Numbered from the stretch's first letter, positions 33,261 through 62,559 are shown. The stretch: 64,000 nucleotides of DNA from Mobula hypostoma (GCF_963921235.1 NC_086117.1:25172001-25236000), one strand, 5' to 3'. Made by a program: numbers and translations. Notes: generated by a model not told the origin, from the letters alone.

Positions 33261-33485
33261 TAAAGTTGCTAGTGAATGCAGCAGGCCAGGCGGCATCTCT
33301 ACGAAGAGGTGCAGTCAACGTTTCAGGCCGAGACCCTTCGTCAGTCCTGATGAAGGGTCTCGGCCTGAAACGTCGACTGCACCTCTTCCTAGAGATGCCG
33401 CCTGGCCTGCTGCGTTCACCAGCAACTTTTATGCGTGTTGCTTGAATTTCCAGCATCTGCAGAATTCTTGTTGTTTGTTGTTTGT
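33261..33485 (+). mobile_element. Young palindromic PLE-derived mini-element
   Basis: 14-bp TSD TAATTAATTAGCTT (33247-33260, 33486-33499); ~85-bp head-to-head arms centred on 33345-33346. Confidence 0.88.
33342..33379 (+). ncRNA. Minimal type-I hammerhead ribozyme, intact core
   Basis: CAGUC CUGAUGA AGGGUCUCGGCCU GAAA CGUC GACUG: stem I CAGUC/GACUG, stem II AGG/CCU, palindromic ACGU helix III, predicted cleavage after C33374. Confidence 0.75.
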
Positions 33486-44597: not shown

Positions 44598-44670
44598 ATG
44601 TCGGTCCCAGCGACAAAGATGAGTAAAAAAGAGGTGAACTCGAACCATGATGGAGCAGACGAGACCTCAG
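44598..44670 (+). CDS. SET: SET coding exon 1 (TAF-I beta type)
   Basis: MSVPATKMSKKEVNSNHDGADETS, donor CAG/gtaatt. The 8 exons give 834 nt (277 aa). Confidence 0.96.
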
Positions 44671-44983
44671 GTAATTTCGAGACACGGGATTTTTTTTTGC
44701 TAAATGTATGTATTGTGTATAAAGCTGTGTAAGTTGTGTTTGGAACCTTCTGTGAGTTGAGTGAAGGCCTGTTTGAGTATGTATAATATTAATGTGTGTG
44801 TGTGTATATATGCGCGGAATGGCGGTCCCACGCTCCCCCTCTCGGTCAGGCTGGAGAGGAGCTGAAAGACAGCGCGGGAGGGTAACTCATTCACTCCGGC
44901 GCCATGTTTATGAACTCGCGTACAGAGGGAGAAAAAAAGACAGAATCTCTCCTCCTCCTCCCTCATTGTGTAAGGCGGCCGCC

Positions 44984-45035
44984 ATGATACCAGGAAAGAG
45001 AAACGGAGCCGCCGCGGCCTGCTCATCGGCCGGAG
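44984..45035 (+). CDS. SET: Candidate alternative first coding exon of SET
   Basis: GCCGCCATG Kozak; MIPGKRNGAAAACSSAG; consensus donor GAG/gtgagt in phase 1, in frame with exon 2. Confidence 0.55.
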
Positions 45036-46258
45036 GTGAGTTGCTCCATTTCTCCACACACGCACTCCCGCCTCCACGCGAATGCAAGAGCGGCAAGGGC
45101 AATGTGCTGCGAGCGATGTTCCGACTGTTGCCTCCCGCTAGTATCTGCATTACTTGGGGTGGGTTGGAGACTGGCGACTGGGGAACAGAGGCCTAACCAC
45201 GCGGCCTGGTGTTAAAGGGATTAGCTTTTTCTTGCTCGCTGGGAGTAAGGTGATTTGAACCGCGAGCGCCGGAAATGAAAAGCCACAATACTACTCAAAC
45301 CATAACTCCACACATGGGGTATTTGTGGAGATTAATTTTATTGAGCTCCGCTTTGGTTTTAAGACTTGCATATTTTCCTTTTAAAATTGGTGGTTTGTGT
45401 GCCTCTGAGACGTATTCTCGGAAATAAAATCCGTCTAAAAGTCAAATTTATTTCCAGAGTTTTATTTCAACCATTATGAAACGGGGGAATTGAATACATA
45501 AATCAAAATCGTAAAAATCGTGTGATAGCACAAATGAACCTATCGTAAATAATATGCATGTTTCGGCAGTTTTTCGTTACAATTCATTTATTTTGTTCTG
45601 TAGAGCCATCGAAGTAGTGACTTCCTTTGGGTAGGAACCACGCGGCCTGTAATTTAGCAGGGGTTCATTCAACACAAAGGGAAGCGGCACTGAAACGTGG
45701 GTCGTTGGCGAATTGTTGACGTTTCTTGGTTTAGATTCGTTATAGCTGAGGTCCGATTGGGATGGAGGAGGAGTTTTGGAGCAATGTGAATCGGGCATCT
45801 ATTTGTGAATGCCATGTTCTATCGCTAATTTTTCCGGTTCTAGTTGAGAAATGTGATAAATAGAGAGAGTATATTCCTTGAGGGTAATCTAGAGCCATTT
45901 AACTAAATTTACTTCTGTTTTTCTATTAAATTCTGGAATGTTTTCTACGAAGTTCATTAAGTGAGTGTTTGTTCCTTTGAAGCTTGCCCATTGCTTTCTA
46001 AGATTTAATGTAATTCTTTTTAAACATAAGTTCATGACCTTTGATGCATAATGAAGTTTACTGCTTCTTTCAGCACAAGATTGAGTGTGGCATTGACTTG
46101 TATTTGAAAGGCAGCATGCTTTAAGATGACGCTTTTCAGAGAAGTTTTTCATGTAGCTGCATCATTTAGAATTATCAAGCGATAAGATTTTTTAAATACT
46201 TGCTAATGTTGTGATTTTTTAATTTAAATAATTTTAAAACATGAAACTTTGCTTGTAG

Positions 46259-46316
46259 AAAAAGAGCAACAGGAAGCCATTGAACACATTGATGAAGTAC
46301 AAAATGAAATAGACAG
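46259..46316 (+). CDS. SET: SET exon 2
   Basis: EKEQQEAIEHIDEVQNEIDR; tag/gtaagg boundaries. Confidence 0.97.
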
Positions 46317-47406
46317 GTAAGGTTAAATAATTTCTGTAACTTTGCATTTTAGCTCCATGGAGCAAATGTCTGGTTTAGCATCAGACAGCATCATTGTTTG
46401 AAAATATTTCCTCTGCTTAATTTGATTCTGATGATGAGACTTTGTAAAATTGCTTTCAAGTCTATCAAATTAATAGAAAATCTCTTAGTTATTTAATTTT
46501 TTGCTGATTTTTAAAGAATTGCTGTACATATTGATAATAAATTGCTGCTATTGTAGATGTACTTATTAAAGTTATAATTTTTAGTTTTATAAAGGATATT
46601 CTGAGTTTTTCAATGCTGACACTATTTGCAGATGGTCAGCTTCACATTTGGATTCCCTCTGAATAGTTAATTTCTGATCCAAATCCAAAATTGTGCCTTG
46701 ATCTTTTAGTTTATTGGGAGATATTCGCTTGGCTTGTTTAAAAACTGATGTTTCCCTCTTATAAAAATTGGCCTCTTTAAATTTATTGAAGTTGCCCATT
46801 ACAGCTAACTCGCTGTAGTTCCCTACTTGCCCTGATTGAATTTTGTTTGTACTTCTAAAGTTTGTGCAGGCCTGTGCTGTAGTTGTGAATTAATTATTAC
46901 TGTGTGGCTGCAGCTAAACATACACCCCATCATTTTGTAACCAAATGCTTTTAGAGTTTGCTTGGCATTTTAGTTGAGATTTTTTAATGCATCTCACAAT
47001 TTCTTGCTGAATTGGAAAATTGGTACATTACTATTTAAAATGAGCAAAAATCCAATATGAAGAAACTTGGGTTATATGGCTAGGCAATCGGGTTTGTGGA
47101 TTATTAGCACTCATTTGAAAGGTTACAAGGGGGGAGTGGTGAAATAGTAGTGGTGTAAGTGAGAGAAGAGTTGTAGAGCTTGTATTTCAGTGGATAATTT
47201 GCTGTCTTGGAAGAGGTCAGTATAATTTATGTTGACTTTTGATTTTGGCGACTAATAGTTCATCTGGCTTCACTTTTTTTGGAGAGACCTTTAGCAATGC
47301 ATGCTGGATTGTGAACAGAAGTGTGGTAAATTGTATGTCTTGAACTCTTTGTCTTTTTTACTTTTTGCCTCAAATGTAATATTCAATAGGCTACTAATAA
47401 TTGTGA

Positions 47407-47583
<177 letters not shown>

Positions 47584-49010
47584 TAAAATGAAGTGAATTT
47601 TGGTGGGTGGTCAAACTCTGGAAGGTCATTAAATAGGACATTTATTTGAAGATGGGTTGTCTTGTGAAAATGAAATTTTCATGTTTTGCTGAAAGTACTA
47701 TGTTCAACTGAGCAGTATAGTCTTTGTAACTGTCTAATTAGTGTAATACTTTAAGGCTACAATATGTTGATAAACTGAACTTTATAGCATTTGTAATTAT
47801 TATTACTTGCCAAGAGGTGGCTCTCCTTAATGGTGACCCCTGGAGGGAGCCATTGTTTATTGCACATTGTAATTAAAATGGTGTGGCTTACTGCACTTAC
47901 AATTTGAAGCACTGAGTATTTGGTATTTGTGTGGGGCTAGAGCTTCAGTGGATTATGCTGCTTCTGTGGTCAAAAATTGTTTCCCAAGCTAGGTTGTAGC
48001 TTTTTTGTGGCCTTTGGCATAGAATCATATAATAAGTGGTTATAACTTGATGCCAACTCTTTCCAAGTTTGTTATGTATTGTTTTTACAACTGGGTTAAA
48101 TGTGGTAGTAATTACAAAGACAAGTTAAGTTCATTTCTGCTTTAAATCTAAACTTAATTCCAGTTTTAACATTTGGGAAGATTTAGAGTAGATCTATCCA
48201 TCACCTATTCAATTTTTACCCACCTAAATATTCCTGTGGTGGGTATCTGTATAAAATTGATTGTTTTCTCATTATTGATAATGCCTGGTGCAATCCCATA
48301 AAGTAAACACCTTGCTTCATGGACAGGATTCTGTGAAAATTTTTATAATTCTGCTGTAAAATTTGGTGGCAGCTTGAGTCTATATGTAAATTGGGGTGTA
48401 TAGCAAAATGGGGGGTTTCCACAGCTGAAATTTTTATCTTCTGTCTTGCTCCATTGCATCCCTGAAGGGGAGGATCTTTGGGAATCATATTTCCTTTCCA
48501 ATTCACAAAGGCTTTTTGTTGGCGGGGGGGAGCTAAAATTGATGCCCAATTCAGCTTTTTTTTGGCAAAGTGGGTAGTTTAATTTTGTTTTTAATGTAAC
48601 ACGTTATTGCTCTAGATTGTTAATATGTAATTATTTGTAATACAGTTACTGCTTATCCAACAGTGTTTGAAATTGTATGAATAAATGTATTTGCCTTTCA
48701 CCAATGTCCATTTGTACTGTGGGAAATTCTTGTAGTTGAGTAGAATAAGGATCTGTGACAACCAAGAGATGTATTTGAAAAATGTTGATTGTGGAACTCT
48801 GACTTGCTGACTTAATTATTAGAGGAATTTTGACATATACAAATTATTTTGTCCATGGATGCATGTTAATGTGTTTCCTTTTTTATTTTGTGCTCTGAAT
48901 TCAGCATCTTACGTATACTGCTATTTTCTCATAAGTGAGCCACTTAGTGTTTTGACACTTCACATTGAACTGAAATCCTATGATGGTGTTTTTTATACCT
49001 TTATTGCTAA

Positions 49011-49205
<195 letters not shown>

Positions 49206-49916
49206 TAATCATAACTTACATAAATCTTTATTATAATGTGTGGAAACAGCATACAGTTTAAACACGCAATCTATGTGGATGTTGTGTTTTTACCTACCAA
49301 TTGTAATCGTTATGCTCTGTTTTATAGTAAGATGCTGTACTTATTGCATTTAACCTTATTTCTCTAGCGGCCAATGAATATTTCTGAAACTTGTAAATAA
49401 AATGGAGTTCTAAATCCATATTTGATTTATAGTTAGGAATAAATTAATACCTAGAGCTTGGATGAAACAAAGAGATCCCAGAGATATGGATATCCTGTTT
49501 AATACTACACTGGTACCTCACATTCATTGCTGGCCAGTCTGTTTTGTCTGATTGCTCTGAATCACAAACTCTAAAGGGTGGTATTTGGGGGGGGGGGTGG
49601 TGATGGTACACATTCACTGTTATGATGGACAAGTTCAGCTTAATTATGTGCTCTGAAAAGTTGGGTAATTGACCTAAGTGAGGTAGTGGTTATTTAGCCT
49701 GTTGTAAGTTCAAAACTGGAAGAAGATTTAAATTGCTTGGTATAATTATGATTTCTGTGCAAGTTCAAGCAGATTTGATTTTTCTGTGTTGATGTGACAT
49801 TTTCCCAGTAAAACCAATTTGCATTTGCAGCTAACATTTTGTGAAATTGCAGTTTCAATAAAGTTGATGCAAATATTTAGAATTTTTTGTGTAGCTTTTC
49901 CTTAAAGTAATCTTGA

Positions 49917-50183
<267 letters not shown>

Positions 50184-51155
50184 TAAAGTCTAACAGCATA
50201 CAGTGCCAAAAAAAGTGGGAAAACTTGCAAAAAGGGAAACAGTGCTCCTGTATTATCATGGATGCTTTAGTAATTTAATAGATCAATATTTTCATATTAT
50301 TGGCTTTGAAAGTATCTAGATTTGTATTAATTGCAAGATGATGTCAAAGTCCTTAAAAGTGGGGGGGGGCAGTGTGGAACACTTGTTCCATGTACCATCT
50401 ACAACTAAAGGGAAAGACTGTTAGGGTGAGGACAATTGATTATCTTTCATAAGTTTATTAAATAAAGTATTATGGAGCCAAAGTGTAAAAGTTTTCAGGA
50501 ATTGGCCACCGTCTAAGGCAAATATCAGGCTTAAAAAATGTTTCCCATTTCTATACTACCCAAGACTACAGGAGATGTGACTTGTCATTTTCACGGTTTA
50601 AGGTCCAGTCCAATAAATTTTAATTTATTGAGATGCAGCATAGAATCGGCTCTTTTGGACCTTGGATTCCTACTGTTAGCAGCTTAAAATTAGATCAGTA
50701 ATTGCTTCATTCTATAATTTTAATGTTGCTAAGATGTATCTAGGTAGAGTGCTTATAAGATTTTTTTTTTTGTTTTTCCCTGTTTACTAAGCAGTTATTT
50801 TTAAATCTTTAGCATTGTTGCTAGAGAGGTACAAAATTGTCTTCAAGATTGTTAAATTTAGCTTTGACTTTTTATTCTCTTCTATAGTATTGATTTTAAA
50901 TATATGGCAGCAGTTCTTCTTTCCCCTTCCAGATAATAGATCATGACAAAAGCTTAAGAGCAGATCTTGTAATATGATATAGTGGTATTATTCATGTTGA
51001 AACCCTTTGGTTTTCTCTACATTTTTGTCATTGTGCTGAATTAAACTTATCCTTAATTTTTCACTTGAGAATAATGAGATAACTGGGCTCCTTCGTATCG
51101 CCAATGTTGTATTTTAAATTCCCTTACTGACCTTAATGCAATGGGTTGTCTATAA

Positions 51156-51374
<219 letters not shown>

Positions 51375-51969
51375 TGAATATTTTGATTGCTGCTCTTAAT
51401 CGTTTAAGAAGTCCAGCTTTATCAGCAGTTGTCTTGTAGGAAATTCAGTTCTAGTTTTTGATCAAAAGTGGCCCAAAATGGTCTGGTTTTGACTGGATTG
51501 ATTTTAAATTTACTTTCTATCTAGGAACATGGGATGGTATTATGTTAATTTTTCTGAAGCTAACTTAGTTTCATTCACTGGATGTCGTCAATTGTAATTC
51601 TGGCATTTGCTGTATCATCTAAATGCGCTGAAAGCTGTTTGAGTTAGTTGAAGATCTAGATTTTCAACTAAGCCAGACTAAGAATATCCTGGATAGAGCT
51701 GTTTGGGTTGTTTTACTGAATTGTTGCCATAGTTGATGTTAGTTTCATATTCTTGATAAAACTTAAATTCTCCAGTTTCCTTTGTGATTGAATTTACTGA
51801 TTAAATGCCATCCCATGTCAGTAGTAAGCTGGTATTTGAATATTCATTGTTTATCAGTATATACACTTATTGAAATCTAAGTTTGCTGCAACAGCTTTGC
51901 TTTATTTCACTTTGTAGCTTCATGTCATCCAGTGTTGCCCCATTATTGACAATGATGATGTGTTCCCAG

Positions 51970-52116
51970 GTTCCAGATATGGAAGATGAAGAAGGGGACG
52001 GTGAAGAAGAAGATGAAGATGAGGAAGAAGAGGAGGGTTTGGAGGACATTGATGAAGAGGGTGATGAAGATGAAGAAGAAGATGAGGAGGAAGAGGAAGA
52101 AGGGGAAGAAGCAGAG
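51970..52116 (+). CDS. SET: SET exon 7 (acidic tail)
   Basis: [34 protein letters not shown]...EEAE; cag/gttaga boundaries. Confidence 0.95.
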
Positions 52117-52400
52117 GTTAGAGCAGTTGCTTCTGTTTGAAATGTACGGTCTATAATTTTTATACGGCAGGCTAGTTTGGGTAATGAATGCAAAATCCAG
52201 ATTTTGAGTGTCATTTAACCATTATGTGATTACTTGCTAACATATCTTGTAGGAACTTTAAATAGGTCATGGTCAATTTTCTAAATGAAAGTATTAAATA
52301 TTTACTGATTGTTGCATGATTCCTGTGGTTTTCAATTATCAGTTGTTCTTGGAAAATAATTTCAGACATTGTCACTAACCTTTGTCCCTTTTCTTTTCAG

Positions 52401-56100: not shown

Positions 56101-56494
56101 CCATCATTGGTAGTGGTAGGATAATTGTTTATTTTATAGCCTTAAACACATGCAATAGACAGTCTTTTTAAAATATAGAAATTTGATAAAGCAGCACACC
56201 GCAGGGTGTCACTTCCAAGCCAGAGCCTGCAGGCAAGCAGAAACAATGATTTTAAAACATTGCTATTATATTAAAAGTTGTCAATGCTTCACTGACCTAT
56301 TTCCATACGCTATGGACTGGACTCACTTTCAAGGACTCTGCATGTTCTATATTTTTGTTTGTATTAACTATGAATGCCCATAAGACAGTGGATCTCAGGG
56401 TTGTACATGACATGTACTTTTGATAATTTTGAACAATCAATGTTTGAATGAGTATGCACCCTGTGAAAGGTAATTTACTCCACAATAATTAAAA

Positions 56495-56500
56495 TTTATT
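56495..56500 (-). terminator. Candidate polyA signal of the CULT-domain gene
   Basis: AATAAA on the minus strand just after the stop codon. Confidence 0.35.
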
Positions 56501-56516
56501 ATAAAAATAACTGATT

Positions 56517-56671
56517 TTATCTTTGATAAGACTTGGGCACCATGAGAAGTGTAGCAGCAAAGTTCTCTTGTAGAAGTCTATCCATAATCAAGGCAATAAA
56601 TGTCTCTTCAGATTCTTCAAATTCTTCATCTGTACTGTACAGAGGCCAGATATCAGGCTGAAAAGACCACC
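56517..56671 (-). CDS. Secreted cereblon-like (CULT domain) protein, last coding exon
   Basis: Acceptor tttttattag; (G)WSFQPDIWPLYSTDEEFEESEETFIALIMDRLL...PKSYQR*. Completes the HLGWxF and FxxL motifs of CULT. Confidence 0.85.
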
Positions 56672-56744
56672 CTAATAAAAACAAACAGTCCATAAATGTG
56701 ATTAGTCTCAGCCTTTTTCCAAGAAAGACATTATATAATAGCAA

Positions 56745-57930
56745 ATGTTTTGCATTTTCATAAACAAAAGTTTAAACCAGGACAAGGCCTAAACATAAAA
56801 GGTGGCTTGGTAACAATGAATTTGAAAGACAGGTGATGCCTTATGAGCCTGACTGAATTCTTTGAGAATATAATACACATTGACAAAGGTAGAACAAACT
56901 GTGTGGTGTATATGAATTCTAGTAAGATATTTGGTAAGGTTCCCTTTAGGCTCATTTATAAAGTCAAAGTATGATATCTAGGGAAACTTGGCTGTGTAGA
57001 AGAAACAGGGTGGTGGTAGATGAGTAAATTCTGCTTGGAGGTTGGTGACAAGTGTTGTTCGCAGGGATCTTCTGGGTCCCCTGCTGATTTTTTTTTTAAT
57101 GTAAAGGATGCATTTGAAGTGGTTAGTACATTTGCAGCTAACACAAAGGCTGGTGGAGTTGTAGATAGGGTAGAGGGTTGTAGGTTGCAGCAGGATCTGA
57201 GTTGAGCTGAGAAGTGGCAGATGAAGTTCAACCCAGAGAAGTTTGAAGTGATTCATCTTGGAAAATAGAATTCTTAGCCATGAAGGAATAGAAGGGTTTT
57301 AAGGTCCAGTCCATAAATCCCTCAAAGTTGCCACACAAGTTGACATGCTTGTTTATGGTGTGTTCATTTTTATTAGTTGAGGGATTGAGTTCAAGAGCTG
57401 CGAGATAACATTGCCATTCTTTAAAACCCTGGTTAGATCACATAATATTGGGTTCAGTTCTGCTCACCTCATTATAGGAAGGATGTGGAAGCTCTGGAGA
57501 GGGTGCAGAGGAGATTACCAGGATGTTGCCTGGACTAAAGGGCATGTCCTATGAAGATAGGTTGAGCAAGCTAGGGCTTTTCTCTTTGGAATGAAGGTGG
57601 TTGTGAGGTGACTTGAGGGATATATTCTGTGGACAGCCAGAGACCTTTTCCCAGGCAGATATGGCTAATACAACCGGGCATAACTTTTTAGATGAGGAAA
57701 TTAGAGGTGAATGGTCAGAAGTTAGTTTTATTCAGAGTAGCTGGTAGTCAGTAGTATGCCCTGCCAGGGGTGGTGGTAGAGGCAAATAAGTTAGGGGCAC
57801 ATAAGAAACAGGTAGGAACATGGATGATAGAAGCATTAAAGGCTATGTAGGAGGGAAGGGTTAGATTGATCTTAGTAGGTTAAAGGTCAGCACAACATTG
57901 GGGGCAGAAGGGCCAGTACTTTTCTATGAT
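56745..57930 (+). mobile_element. Degenerate CR1-like LINE
   Basis: CLMSLTEFFE, WQMKFNPEKFEVIHLG and ALERVQRR remnants; CR1 3' end. Confidence 0.75.
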
Positions 57931-57953
57931 GACCTACGTAAAAAAACAGTACA

Positions 57954-58050
57954 AGCAACACACAAAATGCTAAGGGAACTCAGCAGGCTAGGCAGCATGT
58001 AAAAGGAATAAACAGTCGACATTTTGGGCTGAAACCCTTCATCAGGACTC
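57954..58050 (-). mobile_element. PLE pseudo-LTR fragment with inactivated hammerhead
   Basis: Minus strand GAGTC CTGATGA AGGGTTTCAGCCC AAAA TGTC GACTG (G12 lost). Confidence 0.7.
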
Positions 58051-58611
58051 ATTTAGGGTCAAAGAAGGTGAGGAGGAATTTCCAGAGTTTAACCCTAGGC
58101 AGGTACAAGGATTACTACCTCTCACAGGGGCAAAGACTTAGAATATACAAGCAGCCAGTGTTGGACAAAATAGTTCTTGAAACGTGAGATGAGCAAACTT
58201 GAAAACTTACAGATATAAACATTAAGTTGGTGGTCAAACATAGACACGGGCTGCAAGATCCAAGTAAACATAGATCTTCCCATACCCCAAAAGGCAAACA
58301 ATGAAATTCACCATCACCTTTAATACAGCATACACTGCAAACCATTTCAGAAGAGTTACTTTAAGGTCAAGACCAGAATTGGTACAAAACTCAATCAGGC
58401 AACTGTGAACCCTTTCACACAGTACACTTGGGATATGTATTACTTTTAAAATTCAAGACAACGAGAAGATACTACCAATACTTTCTTCACAAAATCCTCA
58501 ATTCACAAAAAAAACAAATTGATCTAGGGTTAAATACGGGGTTGCTGATTGTGCCACTTGAAGGCCCTATTCTGCACTGTTTCTAAATTAAATACAAAAG
58601 TACCAAACCCC

Positions 58612-58658
58612 CCACCATCACCATGGCCCCAGACCCTCCACCATCACCATGGCCCCAG
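58612..58658. repeat. Short tandem duplication
   Basis: ccaccatcaccatggccccag occurs twice. Confidence 0.8.
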
Positions 58659-59179
58659 TTACACAAGTTCAGAGATCTGGCACTACTCTTGAAATAGACT
58701 ATTTTGACTTGTCTCAGGAAAAGTTTATCAAGTAATCAAAAAGAAATTAAAGAATACATTCAAAGGATTATTGAAAAAAGGCAACACCTTTATTTACTCC
58801 TGTGAATCTGTGGCCCAAAGTAGATAAGAAACAGGATAGTTTCCACAACCTTGAATCCCTAATTCAAGTATATTTCCTCATTTCCTTACCACATAGGAGC
58901 TATTTGTCACTTTACAAAACTTCATTCCCCAAAAACTTTCCTCATAACCTATTCTCACATTCCCATCAATTAGAAGCAATCTCCGTCTCCTGTAGAAAGC
59001 TGGGTAATTTTTCAGTGTAATATCTGCAATTCCTGTTCCTGTAGCCCATACTTGGGATTTGAGCAGTTATTTCCTGGACAACAAGACATATTTTACTGGT
59101 TGTCAAAGGCCAATGAATTTGAGAATTCCTGACCTGCATAATTCTAGCGGGAATAGTAGCTTTTTTTTTTGTCCTGGGT

Positions 59180-60260
59180 GCTTAGTAAGCCAATACCCAA
59201 GATAGAACCGACTAAATTTACAACCCTCTGCAGCTTCTTCTGGTCCTGTGCAGTAGCACCCCCCGCCCCCAAAATACAGCCTGTCAGAATCTCAGTACAT
59301 GGAGCTTAGAAAAATAGAAGGCGATGGGTAACCCTATGTAATTACTAAAGTAAGTACGTTTGGCACAGCACTGTGGGCCGAAGGGCCTGTATTGTGCTGT
59401 AGGTTTTCTATGTTCTAATTATATAACCCATCTATGATCAGCACAACACCATGGGCCCAAGGGCCTGTACAGTGCTGTACCGTTCTATAGTCTATGTAAA
59501 AATTAGTTGCTCCAAATGTCAGTTCCTCTTCAGTGCTATTCCCCAGTCTTTCAAAAATATATCTGACTCCTCTTTAATTAACATCAATGATCTTACTTCC
59601 ATAGCTCTCCAGTGTTGAGGAAGAGATTCACCTATCTGCAAGAAATTCCTTTAAATAACTCCTTTTTGTATAATCATAGCCACTTGAGACCCTTGCACTA
59701 ATGTAAATTTCTCATCGATCTTGTCATGCCCACCCTAGAATTGTCTTTCAATAATGTTATTCCTCATGTTTCAAAACACAATTATTTAAATAACTTGCAG
59801 TGGACAACCCGTCCATCCAGGAATTAGCCCAGTAAACATTTTTTAGGACTGCTTTCAACACCAGTATAATATTTATTTATTTACTTTAAATATATCATTT
59901 AAATAAATAGACAAAATCTCCAGGTGTGGCCCCACCCTGTACAACTGCAACTCCCTGCTACACTACATGTCAACATTTTGATATTTATGTAGAAAACCAC
60001 CCAGATCTCCCCATATTTCACTTATTTACAAAATAAGTTATTTTTAATTCCATTTGAAGCCTCAATTTGCCAAGTTTTTACTTTCAGTCTGTATCCTGTT
60101 GCAGAATGGAAATATCATATCAGCATGTTAACAGCGTCATCAGCAAACCTGAATAATTTCTCTGGGTCATTAAATTAAAAAGTAAATAAACTGTGGGTCA
60201 AGGCATGATCTTTGAAGCACTTCACGAACATGCTTTCAGAATGAGAAACCCCCATTTATT
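59180..60260. mobile_element. Mosaic of Rex and CR1 fragments
   Basis: CR1 3' ends at 59295-59417 and 59437-59497; a degenerate minus-strand CR1 follows. Confidence 0.5.
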
Positions 60261-60835
60261 CTAACACTTTTTCTCCTCTAGAAATTCACAACGTTTACAA
60301 ATACTACCTCTCAGAAATATTTACATAGACAGAATGAGATGGTTTCTGTCTCCAACGAAATCCCATCCTAAAATAACAAAATTCCCCACAAATTTAAACA
60401 GGACAAGAAAAATAGCGTGGGCTCAGATGTTGAGTGTTCTGCCAGGAACAAATCTTCATCGTTCTTTTAACACCTTAAAACAAAACCAGGAATCTAATGG
60501 AAGACTTGCAATTCGAAATCACAAGCAACTGGACAGAATTCAAAACGAAACAACCCGCTTAATTAGCACAGCATATACCTCCGGCAGCATGTCTCGTATT
60601 TAGCAGAGCTGCTTTGAATTCTATCAACCGAAACTCCCTACAAAAACACCACATTCTCAAGGGCATTTAGAAACGAACATTACCACCAAGTGTACGCACA
60701 GGTGCAAAATTAATAGCGTTAATAATAGCTACTGATAATGGCAACCGATTAATTACCAATTAACGTAAAACATTTTTAATAACTGCATAATTTTAAAGCG
60801 CTGTACAGCTCTATAAGTAAACACAAGCTTCTTGC

Positions 60836-61208
60836 CTAAGTGGCTGTGACATCTGGGACACGTTGCTAATGTCCAAGAGTATCCTGGAAACCAGGAAAAC
60901 TGTTCATCTGCCGGCCAATGCTTGTGGACAACGGCTCTCTTGAAAGTGAGCACCTGGAAACGATAGCCCTGTGGGTTCTGAAAGAGTTGCACTGGAACCC
61001 TGTGCTCTCCGATCAATGTGCCGTTCTTCAGAGCCAAAGCCAAGGGACTGGCCACGAATTTAAGGTCCCGACTGGCAGCCACCTCGTAACCGCACGACCT
61101 GCAGAGCAAGAGCTCATCTTTGTAGTCCTCCTCCTTCCCTTCGCTGACGTTGTGGCCGCTCACGGCAGAGGCCGACACCAGCAGCAGTGGCACCAGCGTC
61201 AGCCACAT
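60836..61208 (-). CDS. Secreted cereblon-like (CULT/Yippee-fold) protein, first coding exon
   Basis: Hydrophobic leader MWLTLVPLLLVSASAVSG; LLCRSCG, NPQG and FSWFPGYSWTLATCPRCHSHLG. Acceptor at 61239-61238; GC donor at 60835. Confidence 0.88.
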
Positions 61209-62559
61209 CCTACAGGCCGCTTCCCACCTCGGCCCACCTAATGGGGGAAAAAAACAGTTAATGCCGTCACAAGAAAATCCTTCTAAAATAAATATTTTGA
61301 ATCGCCTTCGCAGCAAATTATTTAAAGTTTCCCTGGGACCTACGTTGCAGCAAATAGTTTTAATTCTCCTCCCTCTAACTGTAGCCTTTTTACAACTTAT
61401 ATTTAAGTGTCCTAAAGCGAAAACACATCGCATTTTAAAAGCCTCAGACAATTACCTCCTCCACCCTCTACTGGTTGGAGGATTCCAATCCACCTACTGC
61501 TTTTGGGATAAAATCACATGGCAATAATCATGTCACTCTTTCCAAGCTTGTATATGTTATTTTCTTTCAACAGTTCAAGAGAAACAGGCATTCACATGGA
61601 GCTTTTTTTTTACAGCCACTAGCAGTTCTATCTTGCAGTTTGCAGCCAATTAACTGCTTTCATAATTTAGAAAACGGGCGCCCATTTTGCACACGTTAAG
61701 GTTGCATAAACAGTATAATAATATCAAAAATATATTTTATCATGATTTCAGCTGAGAGATAAAGGACAGAGGAAAAAACTGCCTTGGCCTTCAGAAATAT
61801 TGCTCCTGTATCTGAAACAGAGATGGGACAAGAGAACAGAAGAAATAGAAGCAGACGAACTTTATCCCTCTCCCACTCCCACAAGCCTTCCTTGGCATTG
61901 AAGATGTGCCAGAGACATTTTCCAGCACTACACCTATATTCCTTCCTGTTCCTTTGATTTATCGATCTCTGTTTTGAATGAACATAATGACCGAACATCC
62001 AGAGTAGAGAATTCACCGTTGCACTTAAAGGAAGCAATTTCTCAGTCTTAGATGAACTATTCCTTAAATTCATATTTTGTCCCCTGGTCCCAGACTATTT
62101 ACTCAGGAAAAAAAATCCTCCCTGCATCTAGTCTGGCAAGACGTTTTATGAGAGGTTTGTAAGTCAAGAAACTCACAAGTACGGTGAATGTCAAGCAGTT
62201 AAAAGGCTGTGGTCATTCTGTGGCTCCTGTTGACTGGGATTCGACAGGTTGTGTGTGAGGTATTACATAAGAAGAGGTTAACACATTGATTGTGTTGACA
62301 TTGATTTTCCTTTCTGTTGAGATTTTGGATATAATAGAGCAGTTTTGTCCAACAGTCATCCGTACCAGTCATGGCAAAGATATTATAAACACATTTATTC
62401 CTCTTGCTTGGATAATGTTAGAATCTAACAGGTGTCAGTAGTTGAACTGAGGAGCTCACACCATGAACTCCCTAATGAAAGGTGCTGGTTATTACAAAAC
62501 CATACTTGCAGCATTTAAGTTCCTGGGAATTAACATATCATATGACCTATCCTGGGAAT

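What the first reader, a model, noticed from the sequence alone, without database searches (positions are those of the whole stretch)
56517..61237. Secreted, stand-alone cereblon-like thalidomide-binding domain protein
Seen: the spliced 175-aa product has a signal-peptide-like leader, two N-glycosylation sequons (NVS, NGT), two CxxC motifs (CRSC, CPRC), NPQG and FSWFPGYSW...HLGWSF. All three cage tryptophans (human CRBN W380/W386/W400) and F402 are retained, while H378->F, H357->F and V388->L. No LON or DDB1-binding domain is present. Established: the CULT cage binds glutarimide/uridine-type rings and C-terminal cyclic imide degrons. Secreted CULT proteins have been noted in animals but, to my knowledge, are functionally uncharacterised and absent from mammals. 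Inference: a lumenal or extracellular reader of cyclic-imide-damaged proteins or small imide/uracil ligands, independent of the E3 ligase. It is also a possible IMiD off-target in fish models. The Zn cysteines might be disulfides in the secretory pathway.
Basis: partly seen in the sequence, partly recalled or inferred. Interest (0 to 1): 0.75.

Follow-up and report, generated by a model that had tools for sequence, protein, structure and literature searches.

The report
Secreted stand-alone cereblon-like (CULT) protein
This is a real, expressed ray gene for a small secreted protein made only of the thalidomide-binding (CULT) domain of cereblon; it belongs to a family first described in 2015 whose function is still untested.

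Summary
A minus-strand gene encodes a 175-aa protein: hydrophobic leader, short linker, then one CULT domain. Its coding parts are 61208-60836 and 56671-56517. Spliced RNA contigs from three species show both introns. The upstream exon carries in-frame stops, so no LON domain is added and the leader is not buried. The protein matches cereblon's thalidomide-binding domain and the bacterial MsCI4 by sequence (E 1e-11 to 4e-14). It also matches by predicted fold (Z 13-14 over about 105 residues).

It is not new. It is the orthologue of zebrafish si:ch211-51h9.7, a member of the "secreted eukaryotic CULT" group of Lupas et al. 2015 (PMC4287342). An identical protein is in RefSeq for Mobula hypostoma, misnamed "protein cereblon".

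- Across 121 relatives the four cysteines, two cage tryptophans and one N-glycosylation sequon are invariant; the third tryptophan is 116/121.
- F at the H378 and H357 positions is a family trait; MsCI4 shares the first.
- The gene sits between PKN and SET in ray and turtle, and next to PKN in frog.
- The frog copy looks intact; the turtle copy looks broken.

Ligand, secretion and zinc-versus-disulfide status remain inferences.

The parts
61344..61449 (-). 5' untranslated exon. Its 5' end is not defined because the RNA contig starts at 61449. It holds two upstream ATGs: one at 61428 opening a 12-codon uORF in the main frame, and one at 61433 opening a 42-codon uORF that overlaps the main ATG.
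   Evidence: RNA contigs X10 and X25 join 61344 to 61237. Translation of the spliced leader shows four in-frame stops upstream of the main ATG.
61238..61343 (-). Intron 1, 106 nt, GT-AG.
   Evidence: Joint 61235/61342 with a cut offset of +2, seen in X10 and X25. The donor reads CAAC|GTAGGT and the acceptor CATTAG|GTGGG.
60836..61237 (-). Exon 2. The coding sequence starts at ATG 61208. It encodes residues 1-124 and the first base of codon 125: leader, linker, first CxxC, sequon hairpin, NPQG, HWPAD, two cage tryptophans and the second CxxC.
   Evidence: phmmer of this exon alone against PDB gives cereblon at E 3.5e-08.
61155..61208 (-). Signal-peptide-like leader, residues 1-18. The hydrophobic core is LTLVPLLLV, with small residues at -3/-1 (ASA or VSG).
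   Evidence: Read directly from the sequence. 110 of 120 relatives have an N-terminal 9-residue window with mean Kyte-Doolittle hydropathy of 2.0 or more before the first CxxC. The AF2 model is disordered there (pLDDT 43-53). No SignalP run was possible.
61017..61025 (-). N-glycosylation sequon N62-G-T64, in a beta-hairpin that has no aligned counterpart in CRBN or MsCI4.
   Evidence: N-x-T/S is present in 121 of 121 aligned relatives. Strands 59-66 and 69-77 are in the AF2 model. That the hairpin is an insertion is inferred: about 105 of 145 model residues align to CRBN/MsCI4.
61092..61103 (-). First CxxC (C36, C39), taken as the counterpart of human CRBN C323/C326.
   Evidence: C36 and C39 are invariant in 121 of 121 relatives. 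They align weakly to the first CxxC of MsCI4 in the profile search. The human numbering is by superposition and from memory.
60849..60893 (-). Cage and second CxxC: W106 (60891-60893), W112 (60873-60875), C117 (60858-60860), C120 (60849-60851).
   Evidence: Aligned to CRBN W380, W386, C391 and C394. All four are invariant in 121 of 121 relatives. pLDDT is 92-96 over this stretch.
56672..60835 (-). Intron 2, 4164 nt, with a GC donor (TTAG|GCAAGA) and an AG acceptor. It holds interspersed repeats at about 57205-58109 and 59196-59557.
   Evidence: The joint is seen in X10, X9 and X25. Only GC..AG fits within the 5-nt ambiguity. The repeats show depths in the thousands, from contigs that run on into unrelated sequence.
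56108..56671 (-). Exon 3. It encodes residues 125-175, including W126 (56667-56669) and F128 (56661-56663). The stop TAA is at 56517-56519. The 3' UTR carries AATAAA at 56128-56133.
   Evidence: The X10 contig covers 56670-56300 and runs 192 nt further. Stop codon and poly(A) signal are.
44600..52140 (+). Neighbouring SET (NAP family) gene, convergent with the CULT gene. Coordinates are approximate.
   Evidence: Open frames carry stretches I recognise from memory as SET, such as [14 protein letters not shown] and YFDENPYF, plus the acidic tail. The gene' of the CULT gene carries PF00956 NAP.

Best explanation
The gene encodes the ray (Mobula) orthologue of the animal 'secreted CULT' protein (zebrafish si:ch211-51h9.7).

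What is shown here: a 175-aa product consisting of a cleavable-looking signal peptide, a roughly 12-residue acidic linker, and a single CULT (beta-tent) domain that runs to the last residue. The gene is transcribed and spliced as modelled. Nothing in the product resembles the LON-like or DDB1-binding parts of cereblon.

What is inferred, in order of decreasing confidence:
1. The protein enters the ER, is N-glycosylated at the invariant N62 and is secreted, or at least is lumenal.
2. Its three-tryptophan cage (W106, W112, W126, flanked by F128) binds a small cyclic imide, lactam or uracil-type ring, as the cages of cereblon and bacterial MsCI4 do. From my recollection of the published structures, the ring is held through backbone contacts of residues 104-106.
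3. It acts as a soluble binder or scavenger, or as a receptor subunit, and not as a ubiquitin-ligase adaptor. Its natural ligand could be uridine or uracil-like metabolites, or C-terminal cyclic imides on aged extracellular proteins.
For: Gene model and expression:
- Spliced RNA contigs: X10 with 0 mismatches over 880 nt, plus X25 and X9 from related species.
- In-frame stops in the 5' exon.

Identity:
- Identical to RefSeq XP_062929742.1 of Mobula hypostoma.
- 58-86% identical to sequences that their sources name si:ch211-51h9.7 or CULT domain-containing protein.
- The family is described as group II, signal sequence plus CULT only, with a sand-fly salivary member, in PMC4287342.

Domain:
- phmmer E 1.2e-11 to the CRBN thalidomide-binding domain; profile E 4e-14 to MsCI4.
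- AF2 core pLDDT above 90.
- VIA-align Z 13-14, rmsd 2.1-3.0 A. About 105 residues span MsCI4 18-124 and CRBN 318-429 against model residues 30-175.

Cage under selection:
- W106 and W112 are 121/121, W126 is 116/121 and F128 is 117/121. I judge the exceptions to be mis-spliced gene models.
- 9 synonymous against 7 non-synonymous differences in a related species' transcript, none at cage, cysteine or sequon positions.

F104 is compatible with binding: MsCI4 has F at the same position and has been crystallised with thalidomide, pomalidomide and deoxyuridine (entry titles).

Secretory route:
- Hydrophobic leader in 110 of 120 relatives and the N62 sequon in 121 of 121.
- The nearest arthropod cluster in the ESM Atlas is named 'Putative conserved secreted protein'.
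Against: - No signal-peptide predictor and no experiment were available.
- The leader has no positively charged n-region.
- A Cys4 zinc site is unusual for a protein that folds in the oxidising ER, so the fold, or the metal, may differ from that of cereblon.
- No ligand has been tested for any secreted CULT protein in the open literature I could search.
- Family-specific residues close to the cage in sequence (HWPAD at 97-101, F84, F104) could change specificity away from glutarimide.
- The tissues of the RNA runs are hidden, so the site of expression is unknown.
Confidence: 0.8

Rival explanations
1. It is a true cereblon, as RefSeq names it: a ubiquitin-ligase substrate receptor or a truncated isoform of one, acting inside the cell.
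For: RefSeq and UniRef name this protein and several orthologues 'protein cereblon'. The CULT domain matches cereblon's closely.
Against: The transcript encodes only leader plus CULT, with stops upstream. No LON or DDB1-binding region exists. The gene sits between PKN and SET as its own locus in ray and turtle, and beside PKN in frog. Lupas 2015 lists zebrafish CRBN and the secreted protein as two separate genes.
Confidence: 0.03
2. It is a resident protein of the ER or Golgi lumen, or it is membrane-tethered, and is not released. It would read imide-type marks on, or bind a metabolite near, proteins in transit.
For: The same leader and sequon evidence as for secretion. The C-terminal stretch ending PKS-F/Y-x-S is conserved.
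Against: There is no KDEL- or HDEL-like end, and no hydrophobic stretch long enough for a membrane span or a GPI signal. The conserved tail superposes on the last strand of the CULT fold, so it is structural. A sand-fly homologue is found in saliva.
Confidence: 0.12
3. The cage no longer binds imide-like rings. The domain serves as a protein-protein interaction scaffold or binds a different ligand class, for example a methylated or quaternary amine. The tryptophans would then be kept for structure.
For: Residues close to the cage in sequence differ from cereblon across the whole family: F84, F104, and HWPAD in place of LIGRPS. Lupas 2015 raises amino-acid side chains as another type of candidate ligand for such cages.
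Against: MsCI4 shares F at the H378 position and still binds thalidomide and deoxyuridine. All three cage tryptophans and F128 are kept.
Confidence: 0.15

Closest known systems
Secreted eukaryotic CULT proteins (group II of Lupas, Zhu and Korycinski 2015, PMC4287342), e.g. zebrafish NP_001121712.1 / si:ch211-51h9.7 and the Phlebotomus arabicus salivary homologue
   Same: Same architecture (signal sequence plus one CULT domain), same invariant cysteines and cage tryptophans, and 58-66% identity to teleost members over the aligned part.
   Different: Nothing essential; this is a cartilaginous-fish orthologue. Local peculiarities are L114 (V in most members), an extra NVS sequon just after the leader (N-x-S/T in the sharks and rays aligned), and a GC-AG intron.
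Cereblon (CRBN) thalidomide-binding domain, human residues 318-429
   Same: Same fold (Z about 13.5, rmsd about 2.7 A, 30% identity over 107 residues). W380, W386, W400, F402 and the NPxG hairpin all have counterparts, and so do both CxxC motifs.
   Different: No LON-like domain and no DDB1-binding helices, and a secretion leader instead. H378->F, H357->F, E377->Q. About 40 residues of the model range are left unaligned, which I place at roughly 46-66 (with the sequon) and 130-147 (acidic) from the alignments and the secondary structure.
MsCI4 (MGR_0879) of Magnetospirillum gryphiswaldense, the bacterial single-domain CULT protein
   Same: A stand-alone CULT domain and the best structural match (Z 14.0, 106 of 107 residues). 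It shares F at the H378 position (EFSWF against QFSWF). It has been solved with thalidomide, pomalidomide, deoxyuridine and many glutarimides.
   Different: It is bacterial. The solved chains show no secretion leader or sequon, and lack the stretches of the ray protein that stay unaligned. Y101 stands where the ray protein has F128.
Yippee / Mis18 (Pfam PF03226)
   Same: Distantly related beta-tent zinc domain. This is the only Pfam model that the protein touches (E 7e-4).
   Different: The score of 20.1 bits is below the gathering cut-off of 26.6 and the match covers only residues 93-129.

Membership tests
CULT domain (Lupas 2015) | Beta-tent fold of the cereblon thalidomide-binding domain | tested here: met
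   AF2 model with core pLDDT above 90. Foldseek's top 50 matches are all CRBN or MsCI4. VIA-align gives Z 13-14 covering whole MsCI4 and CRBN 318-429.
CULT domain (Lupas 2015) | Two CxxC motifs (zinc site) | tested here: met
   C36/C39 and C117/C120 are present and invariant in 121 of 121 relatives. Metal occupancy cannot be tested here.
CULT domain (Lupas 2015) | Three cage tryptophans | tested here: met
   W106, W112 and W126 align to W380, W386 and W400. They are conserved in 121, 121 and 116 of 121 relatives.
CULT domain (Lupas 2015) | Binds thalidomide or cellular ligands in the cage | not testable with these tools
   Needs purified protein and a binding assay.
Secreted eukaryotic CULT group | The protein consists of the CULT domain only | tested here: met
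   The spliced transcript has stops upstream of the ATG. The structural alignment spans residues 30-175.
Secreted eukaryotic CULT group | N-terminal secretion signal | tested here: inconclusive
   Hydrophobic leader with small residues at -3/-1, conserved in 110 of 120 relatives, and an invariant sequon. No dedicated predictor and no experiment.
Secreted eukaryotic CULT group | Orthology to the listed members (zebrafish si:ch211-51h9.7) | tested here: met
   The best hits carry that name. Position next to PKN, and next to SET where the locus reaches it, is shared by ray, turtle and frog. The zebrafish locus itself was not examined.
Cereblon proper (CRL4 substrate receptor) | N-terminal LON-like domain with DDB1-binding helical insert | tested here: not met
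   175 aa in total, with residues 1-29 being leader and linker. There is no upstream coding exon in the transcript.
Yippee-Mis18 (PF03226) | Score at or above Pfam's gathering cut-off | tested here: not met
   20.1 bits against a cut-off of 26.6.

The most novel reading that the evidence does not exclude
The secreted CULT protein is an extracellular or lumenal receptor for C-terminal cyclic imides (aspartimide or glutarimide ends left by spontaneous chain breakage) on long-lived secreted proteins, or for uridine-type metabolites. That would give non-mammalian animals a ligase-independent way to detect or clear such damage. The system would have decayed in amniotes, with a broken copy in a turtle and no copy reported in mammals.
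Probability: 0.15. Interest if true: 0.75.

Novelty: already known. Interest (0 to 1): 0.3.

Why it matters
The CULT cage is the most exploited drug-binding pocket in targeted protein degradation. Even so, its natural ligands outside cereblon, and the role of its secreted relatives, have never been tested. A secreted protein with the same cage would bind imide drugs outside the cell in fish, frogs and invertebrates. That could confound thalidomide work in zebrafish, and it hints at a ligase-independent biology of cyclic imides or uridine. This window adds no new kind of molecule. It adds a clean, transcript-supported gene model, a list of family-invariant residues, and a fixed chromosomal address (between PKN and SET) that makes loss in amniotes traceable.

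Tried and rejected
1. Upstream extension. RefSeq models of three other rays (194 aa) start at an upstream ATG and join it in frame. In this window the donor those models need reads AT (61400-61399). The RNA contigs of this species and of one relative read straight through it to the donor at 61344, which puts a stop 12 codons after that ATG. The extension is rejected for this genome.

2. Pfam gave no family above cut-off, only Yippee-Mis18 below threshold and chance zinc-ribbon hits. Pfam has no CULT model, so this says nothing against the assignment.

3. A literature search for the zebrafish gene name found no paper (one search was a syntax error). Searches for secreted, salivary or extracellular CULT found only Lupas 2015.

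4. All sequencing runs were listed as 'RNA?' guesses with hidden tissues. The spliced contigs show that RNA exists, but level and tissue cannot be read from contigs.

5. I looked for tetrapod relatives with the turtle protein as query and found only one frog protein. The search is word-limited, so this is not a census.

6. Coordinates of the AF2 model cannot be read in scripts, so cage geometry and tail contacts were not measured.

7. No complex prediction was run, because no protein partner is claimed.
Full report
**1. What is in the sequence**

On the minus strand, an ATG at 61208 opens a frame that runs to a GC donor after 60836. It resumes at 56671 behind a polypyrimidine/AG acceptor and stops at TAA 56519-56517. 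The joined frame is 528 nt and encodes 175 aa.
- leader MWLTLVPLLLVSASAVSG
- sequons NVS and NGT
- CRSC and CPRC
- NPQG
- FSWFPGYSW
- HLGWSF

**2. The gene model is supported by RNA**

I laid the contigs of four public runs on 56300-61700. Run X10 gave one 1072-nt contig with no mismatch. It covers 61449-61342, 61235-60835 and 56670-56300, and runs 192 nt further. That end lies about 20 nt past an AATAAA at 56133-56128.

Contigs from two other organisms show the same joints:
- X25 differs at 11 positions over the three pieces (10 more are gap positions in the 3' UTR).
- X9 differs at 18 positions and lacks one codon (three single-base gaps across codons 26-27).

For the large intron, the 5-nt ambiguity allows only GC..AG.

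The exon it brings in is untranslated. In the main frame it reads through four stops before the ATG at 61208.

RefSeq's 194-aa models in three other rays start at an ATG that corresponds to 61428 here. They need a donor at a site that reads AT in this window. Here that ATG opens a 12-codon uORF.

**3. Identity**

The 175-aa product is identical to P0048, RefSeq XP_062929742.1 of Mobula hypostoma, where it is named 'protein cereblon'. Close relatives are found in:
- rays and sharks (78-95% identity to the ray protein)
- sturgeon, gar, bowfin and coelacanth
- many teleosts
- Ciona (43%)

Many of these are named si:ch211-51h9.7 or CULT domain-containing protein by their sources.

Lupas, Zhu and Korycinski 2015 (PMC4287342) describe this group. 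[quoted passage not shown] Zebrafish NP_001121712.1 is in their alignment, and a Phlebotomus arabicus homologue has been found as a salivary protein. The nearest arthropod cluster in the ESM Atlas is automatically named 'Putative conserved secreted protein'.

**4. The domain**

*Sequence.* phmmer against PDB sequences finds only cereblon and MsCI4 chains, with E 1.2e-11 for the full protein. A profile of 39 relatives gives 4e-14. Pfam has no CULT model; the only related hit is Yippee-Mis18, below its cut-off.

*Fold.* An AlphaFold2 model built on the family alignment has mean pLDDT 80.8, with blocks of 89-96 over most of residues 31-150 (81 and 88 in two blocks) and a disordered leader and linker. 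Foldseek's top 50 matches are all CRBN or MsCI4. VIA-align gives Z 13-14 at rmsd 2.1-3.0 A. About 105 residues cover MsCI4 18-124 and human CRBN 318-429 against model residues 30-175.

So the conserved C-terminal tail is the last strand of the fold and not an extra module. The protein is leader, linker and CULT, nothing else. About 40 residues of the model range stay unaligned. From the sequence alignments and the secondary structure I place these as two insertions relative to CRBN: a hairpin at about 46-66 that carries the NGT sequon, and an acidic stretch at about 130-147.

**5. Residue mapping**

Using chains with full-length human numbering (query 72-129 = CRBN 345-403):
- W106 = W380, W112 = W386, W126 = W400, F128 = F402
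- N78 = N351
- F104 = H378, F84 = H357, Q103 = E377, L114 = V388
- C117 and C120 = C391 and C394

C36/C39 as C323/C326 rests on the superposition and on the human sequence as I recall it.

I aligned 121 relatives of at least 150 aa:

| Position | Conservation |
|---|---|
| Four cysteines, W106, W112, N78 | 121/121 each |
| N62-x-T/S sequon | 121/121 |
| W126 | 116/121 |
| F128 | 117/121 |
| F84 | 120/121 |
| F104 | 114/121 |
| W98, P99, A100 (family signature HWPAD) | 119-120/121 |

I judge the exceptions at W126 and F128 to be mis-spliced gene models.

The two His-to-Phe changes are therefore family traits. MsCI4 also has Phe at the H378 position (EFSWF), yet it has been crystallised with thalidomide, pomalidomide, deoxyuridine and many glutarimides (titles). 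That argues the change does not abolish binding. From my own recollection of those structures, the imide is held there by backbone atoms.

L114 is specific to this species. Two related species' transcripts carry V, and V is the family majority.

**6. Selection**

The transcript of a related species (X9) differs in the coding region at 9 synonymous and 7 non-synonymous sites and lacks one codon. None of these changes touches the cage, cysteine or sequon positions. The sample is small, but together with 43% identity to Ciona it fits purifying selection.

**7. Secretion**

There is no direct test. The indirect evidence is:
- a hydrophobic leader with small residues at -3/-1, conserved as a feature in 110 of 120 relatives
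- a sequon kept in every relative, in a segment that has no aligned counterpart in CRBN or MsCI4
- the salivary arthropod homologue
- no ER-retention end and no membrane-length hydrophobic stretch

Against it, the leader lacks a positive n-region, and a Cys4 zinc site is unusual in the secretory pathway.

**8. Surroundings**

The gene call for the identical protein in the Mobula hypostoma assembly lies between a PKN-type kinase (HR1 plus Pkinase domains) and a NAP-family gene. In the window, that NAP gene is SET, on the plus strand at about 44.6-52.1 kb and convergent with the CULT gene. The kinase lies beyond the window's end.

The same order, PKN then CULT then SET, is found in a turtle (L001). 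PKN then CULT is found in a frog.

- The frog protein (P0137) keeps the leader, both CxxC motifs, a sequon and the three tryptophans, but has lost NPxG and HWPAD.
- The turtle locus carries in-frame stops and frame shifts across the first coding exon and the tail, so it looks like a pseudogene.

The family therefore reaches tetrapods, slightly beyond what the 2015 paper stated, and seems to be decaying in at least one amniote. I could not examine mammals.

**9. Function**

The steps shown are architecture, expression, fold, an intact and conserved cage, and absence of the ligase-docking parts. The steps inferred are entry into the secretory pathway, binding of an imide, lactam or uracil-type ring, and action as a soluble binder.

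The specific proposal of reading C-terminal cyclic imides on extracellular proteins is attractive, because cereblon recognises that modification (abstract of PMC11974815, listed). It is untested, and I give it about 0.15.

In the open-access library I found no paper that tests any secreted CULT protein.

**10. Verdict**

The feature is real, correctly read and well supported. It is an orthologue of a family described in 2015 and is already in RefSeq, under a misleading name. Interest is modest. The open question of what secreted CULT proteins bind is genuine, but this window does not make it more testable than the zebrafish gene already did.

Noticed in passing
L001:9850-11010 (Platysternon megacephalum, between PKN and SET): The turtle copy of the secreted-CULT gene has two in-frame stops just before the first CxxC and one at the sequon position. 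It also has frame shifts between the first CxxC and the NPxG region and in the tail, and lacks the serine of FSW. The annotated 136-aa 'urocortin-3-like' protein (P0045) is a patched reading. It is probably a unitary pseudogene.
   Followed up: partly
P0137 (Discoglossus pictus), gene next to a PKN-type kinase: A frog has an intact-looking but divergent secreted-CULT protein: leader, both CxxC motifs, three tryptophans and an NSS sequon are kept, while NPxG and HWPAD are lost. The family therefore reaches tetrapods, beyond the 'not beyond fishes' of the 2015 description.
   Followed up: partly
window 61390-61433 (minus strand): The 5' untranslated exon holds two upstream ATGs. One opens a 12-codon uORF in the main frame. 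The other opens a 42-codon uORF that overlaps the main start codon. This may be translational control. Three sister species' RefSeq models turn the first ATG into a 19-residue N-terminal extension through a donor that reads AT here.
   Followed up: partly
window 57205-58109 and 59196-59557: Interspersed repeats inside the large intron attract RNA contigs at depths in the thousands, with many spurious joints. Two copies of one repeat family are about 1.5 kb apart. The repeats were not classified.
   Followed up: no
window 60835 (minus strand): The main intron has a GC donor (TTAG|GCAAGA) in place of GT, confirmed by transcripts of three species.
   Followed up: yes
window 44600-52140 (plus strand): The SET (NAP family) gene lies convergent with the CULT gene. 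Its exons are recognisable by conserved stretches and the acidic tail.
   Followed up: partly
window 33261-33485: Another first-stage note on this window reports a hammerhead ribozyme-like palindrome. I did not examine it.
   Followed up: no
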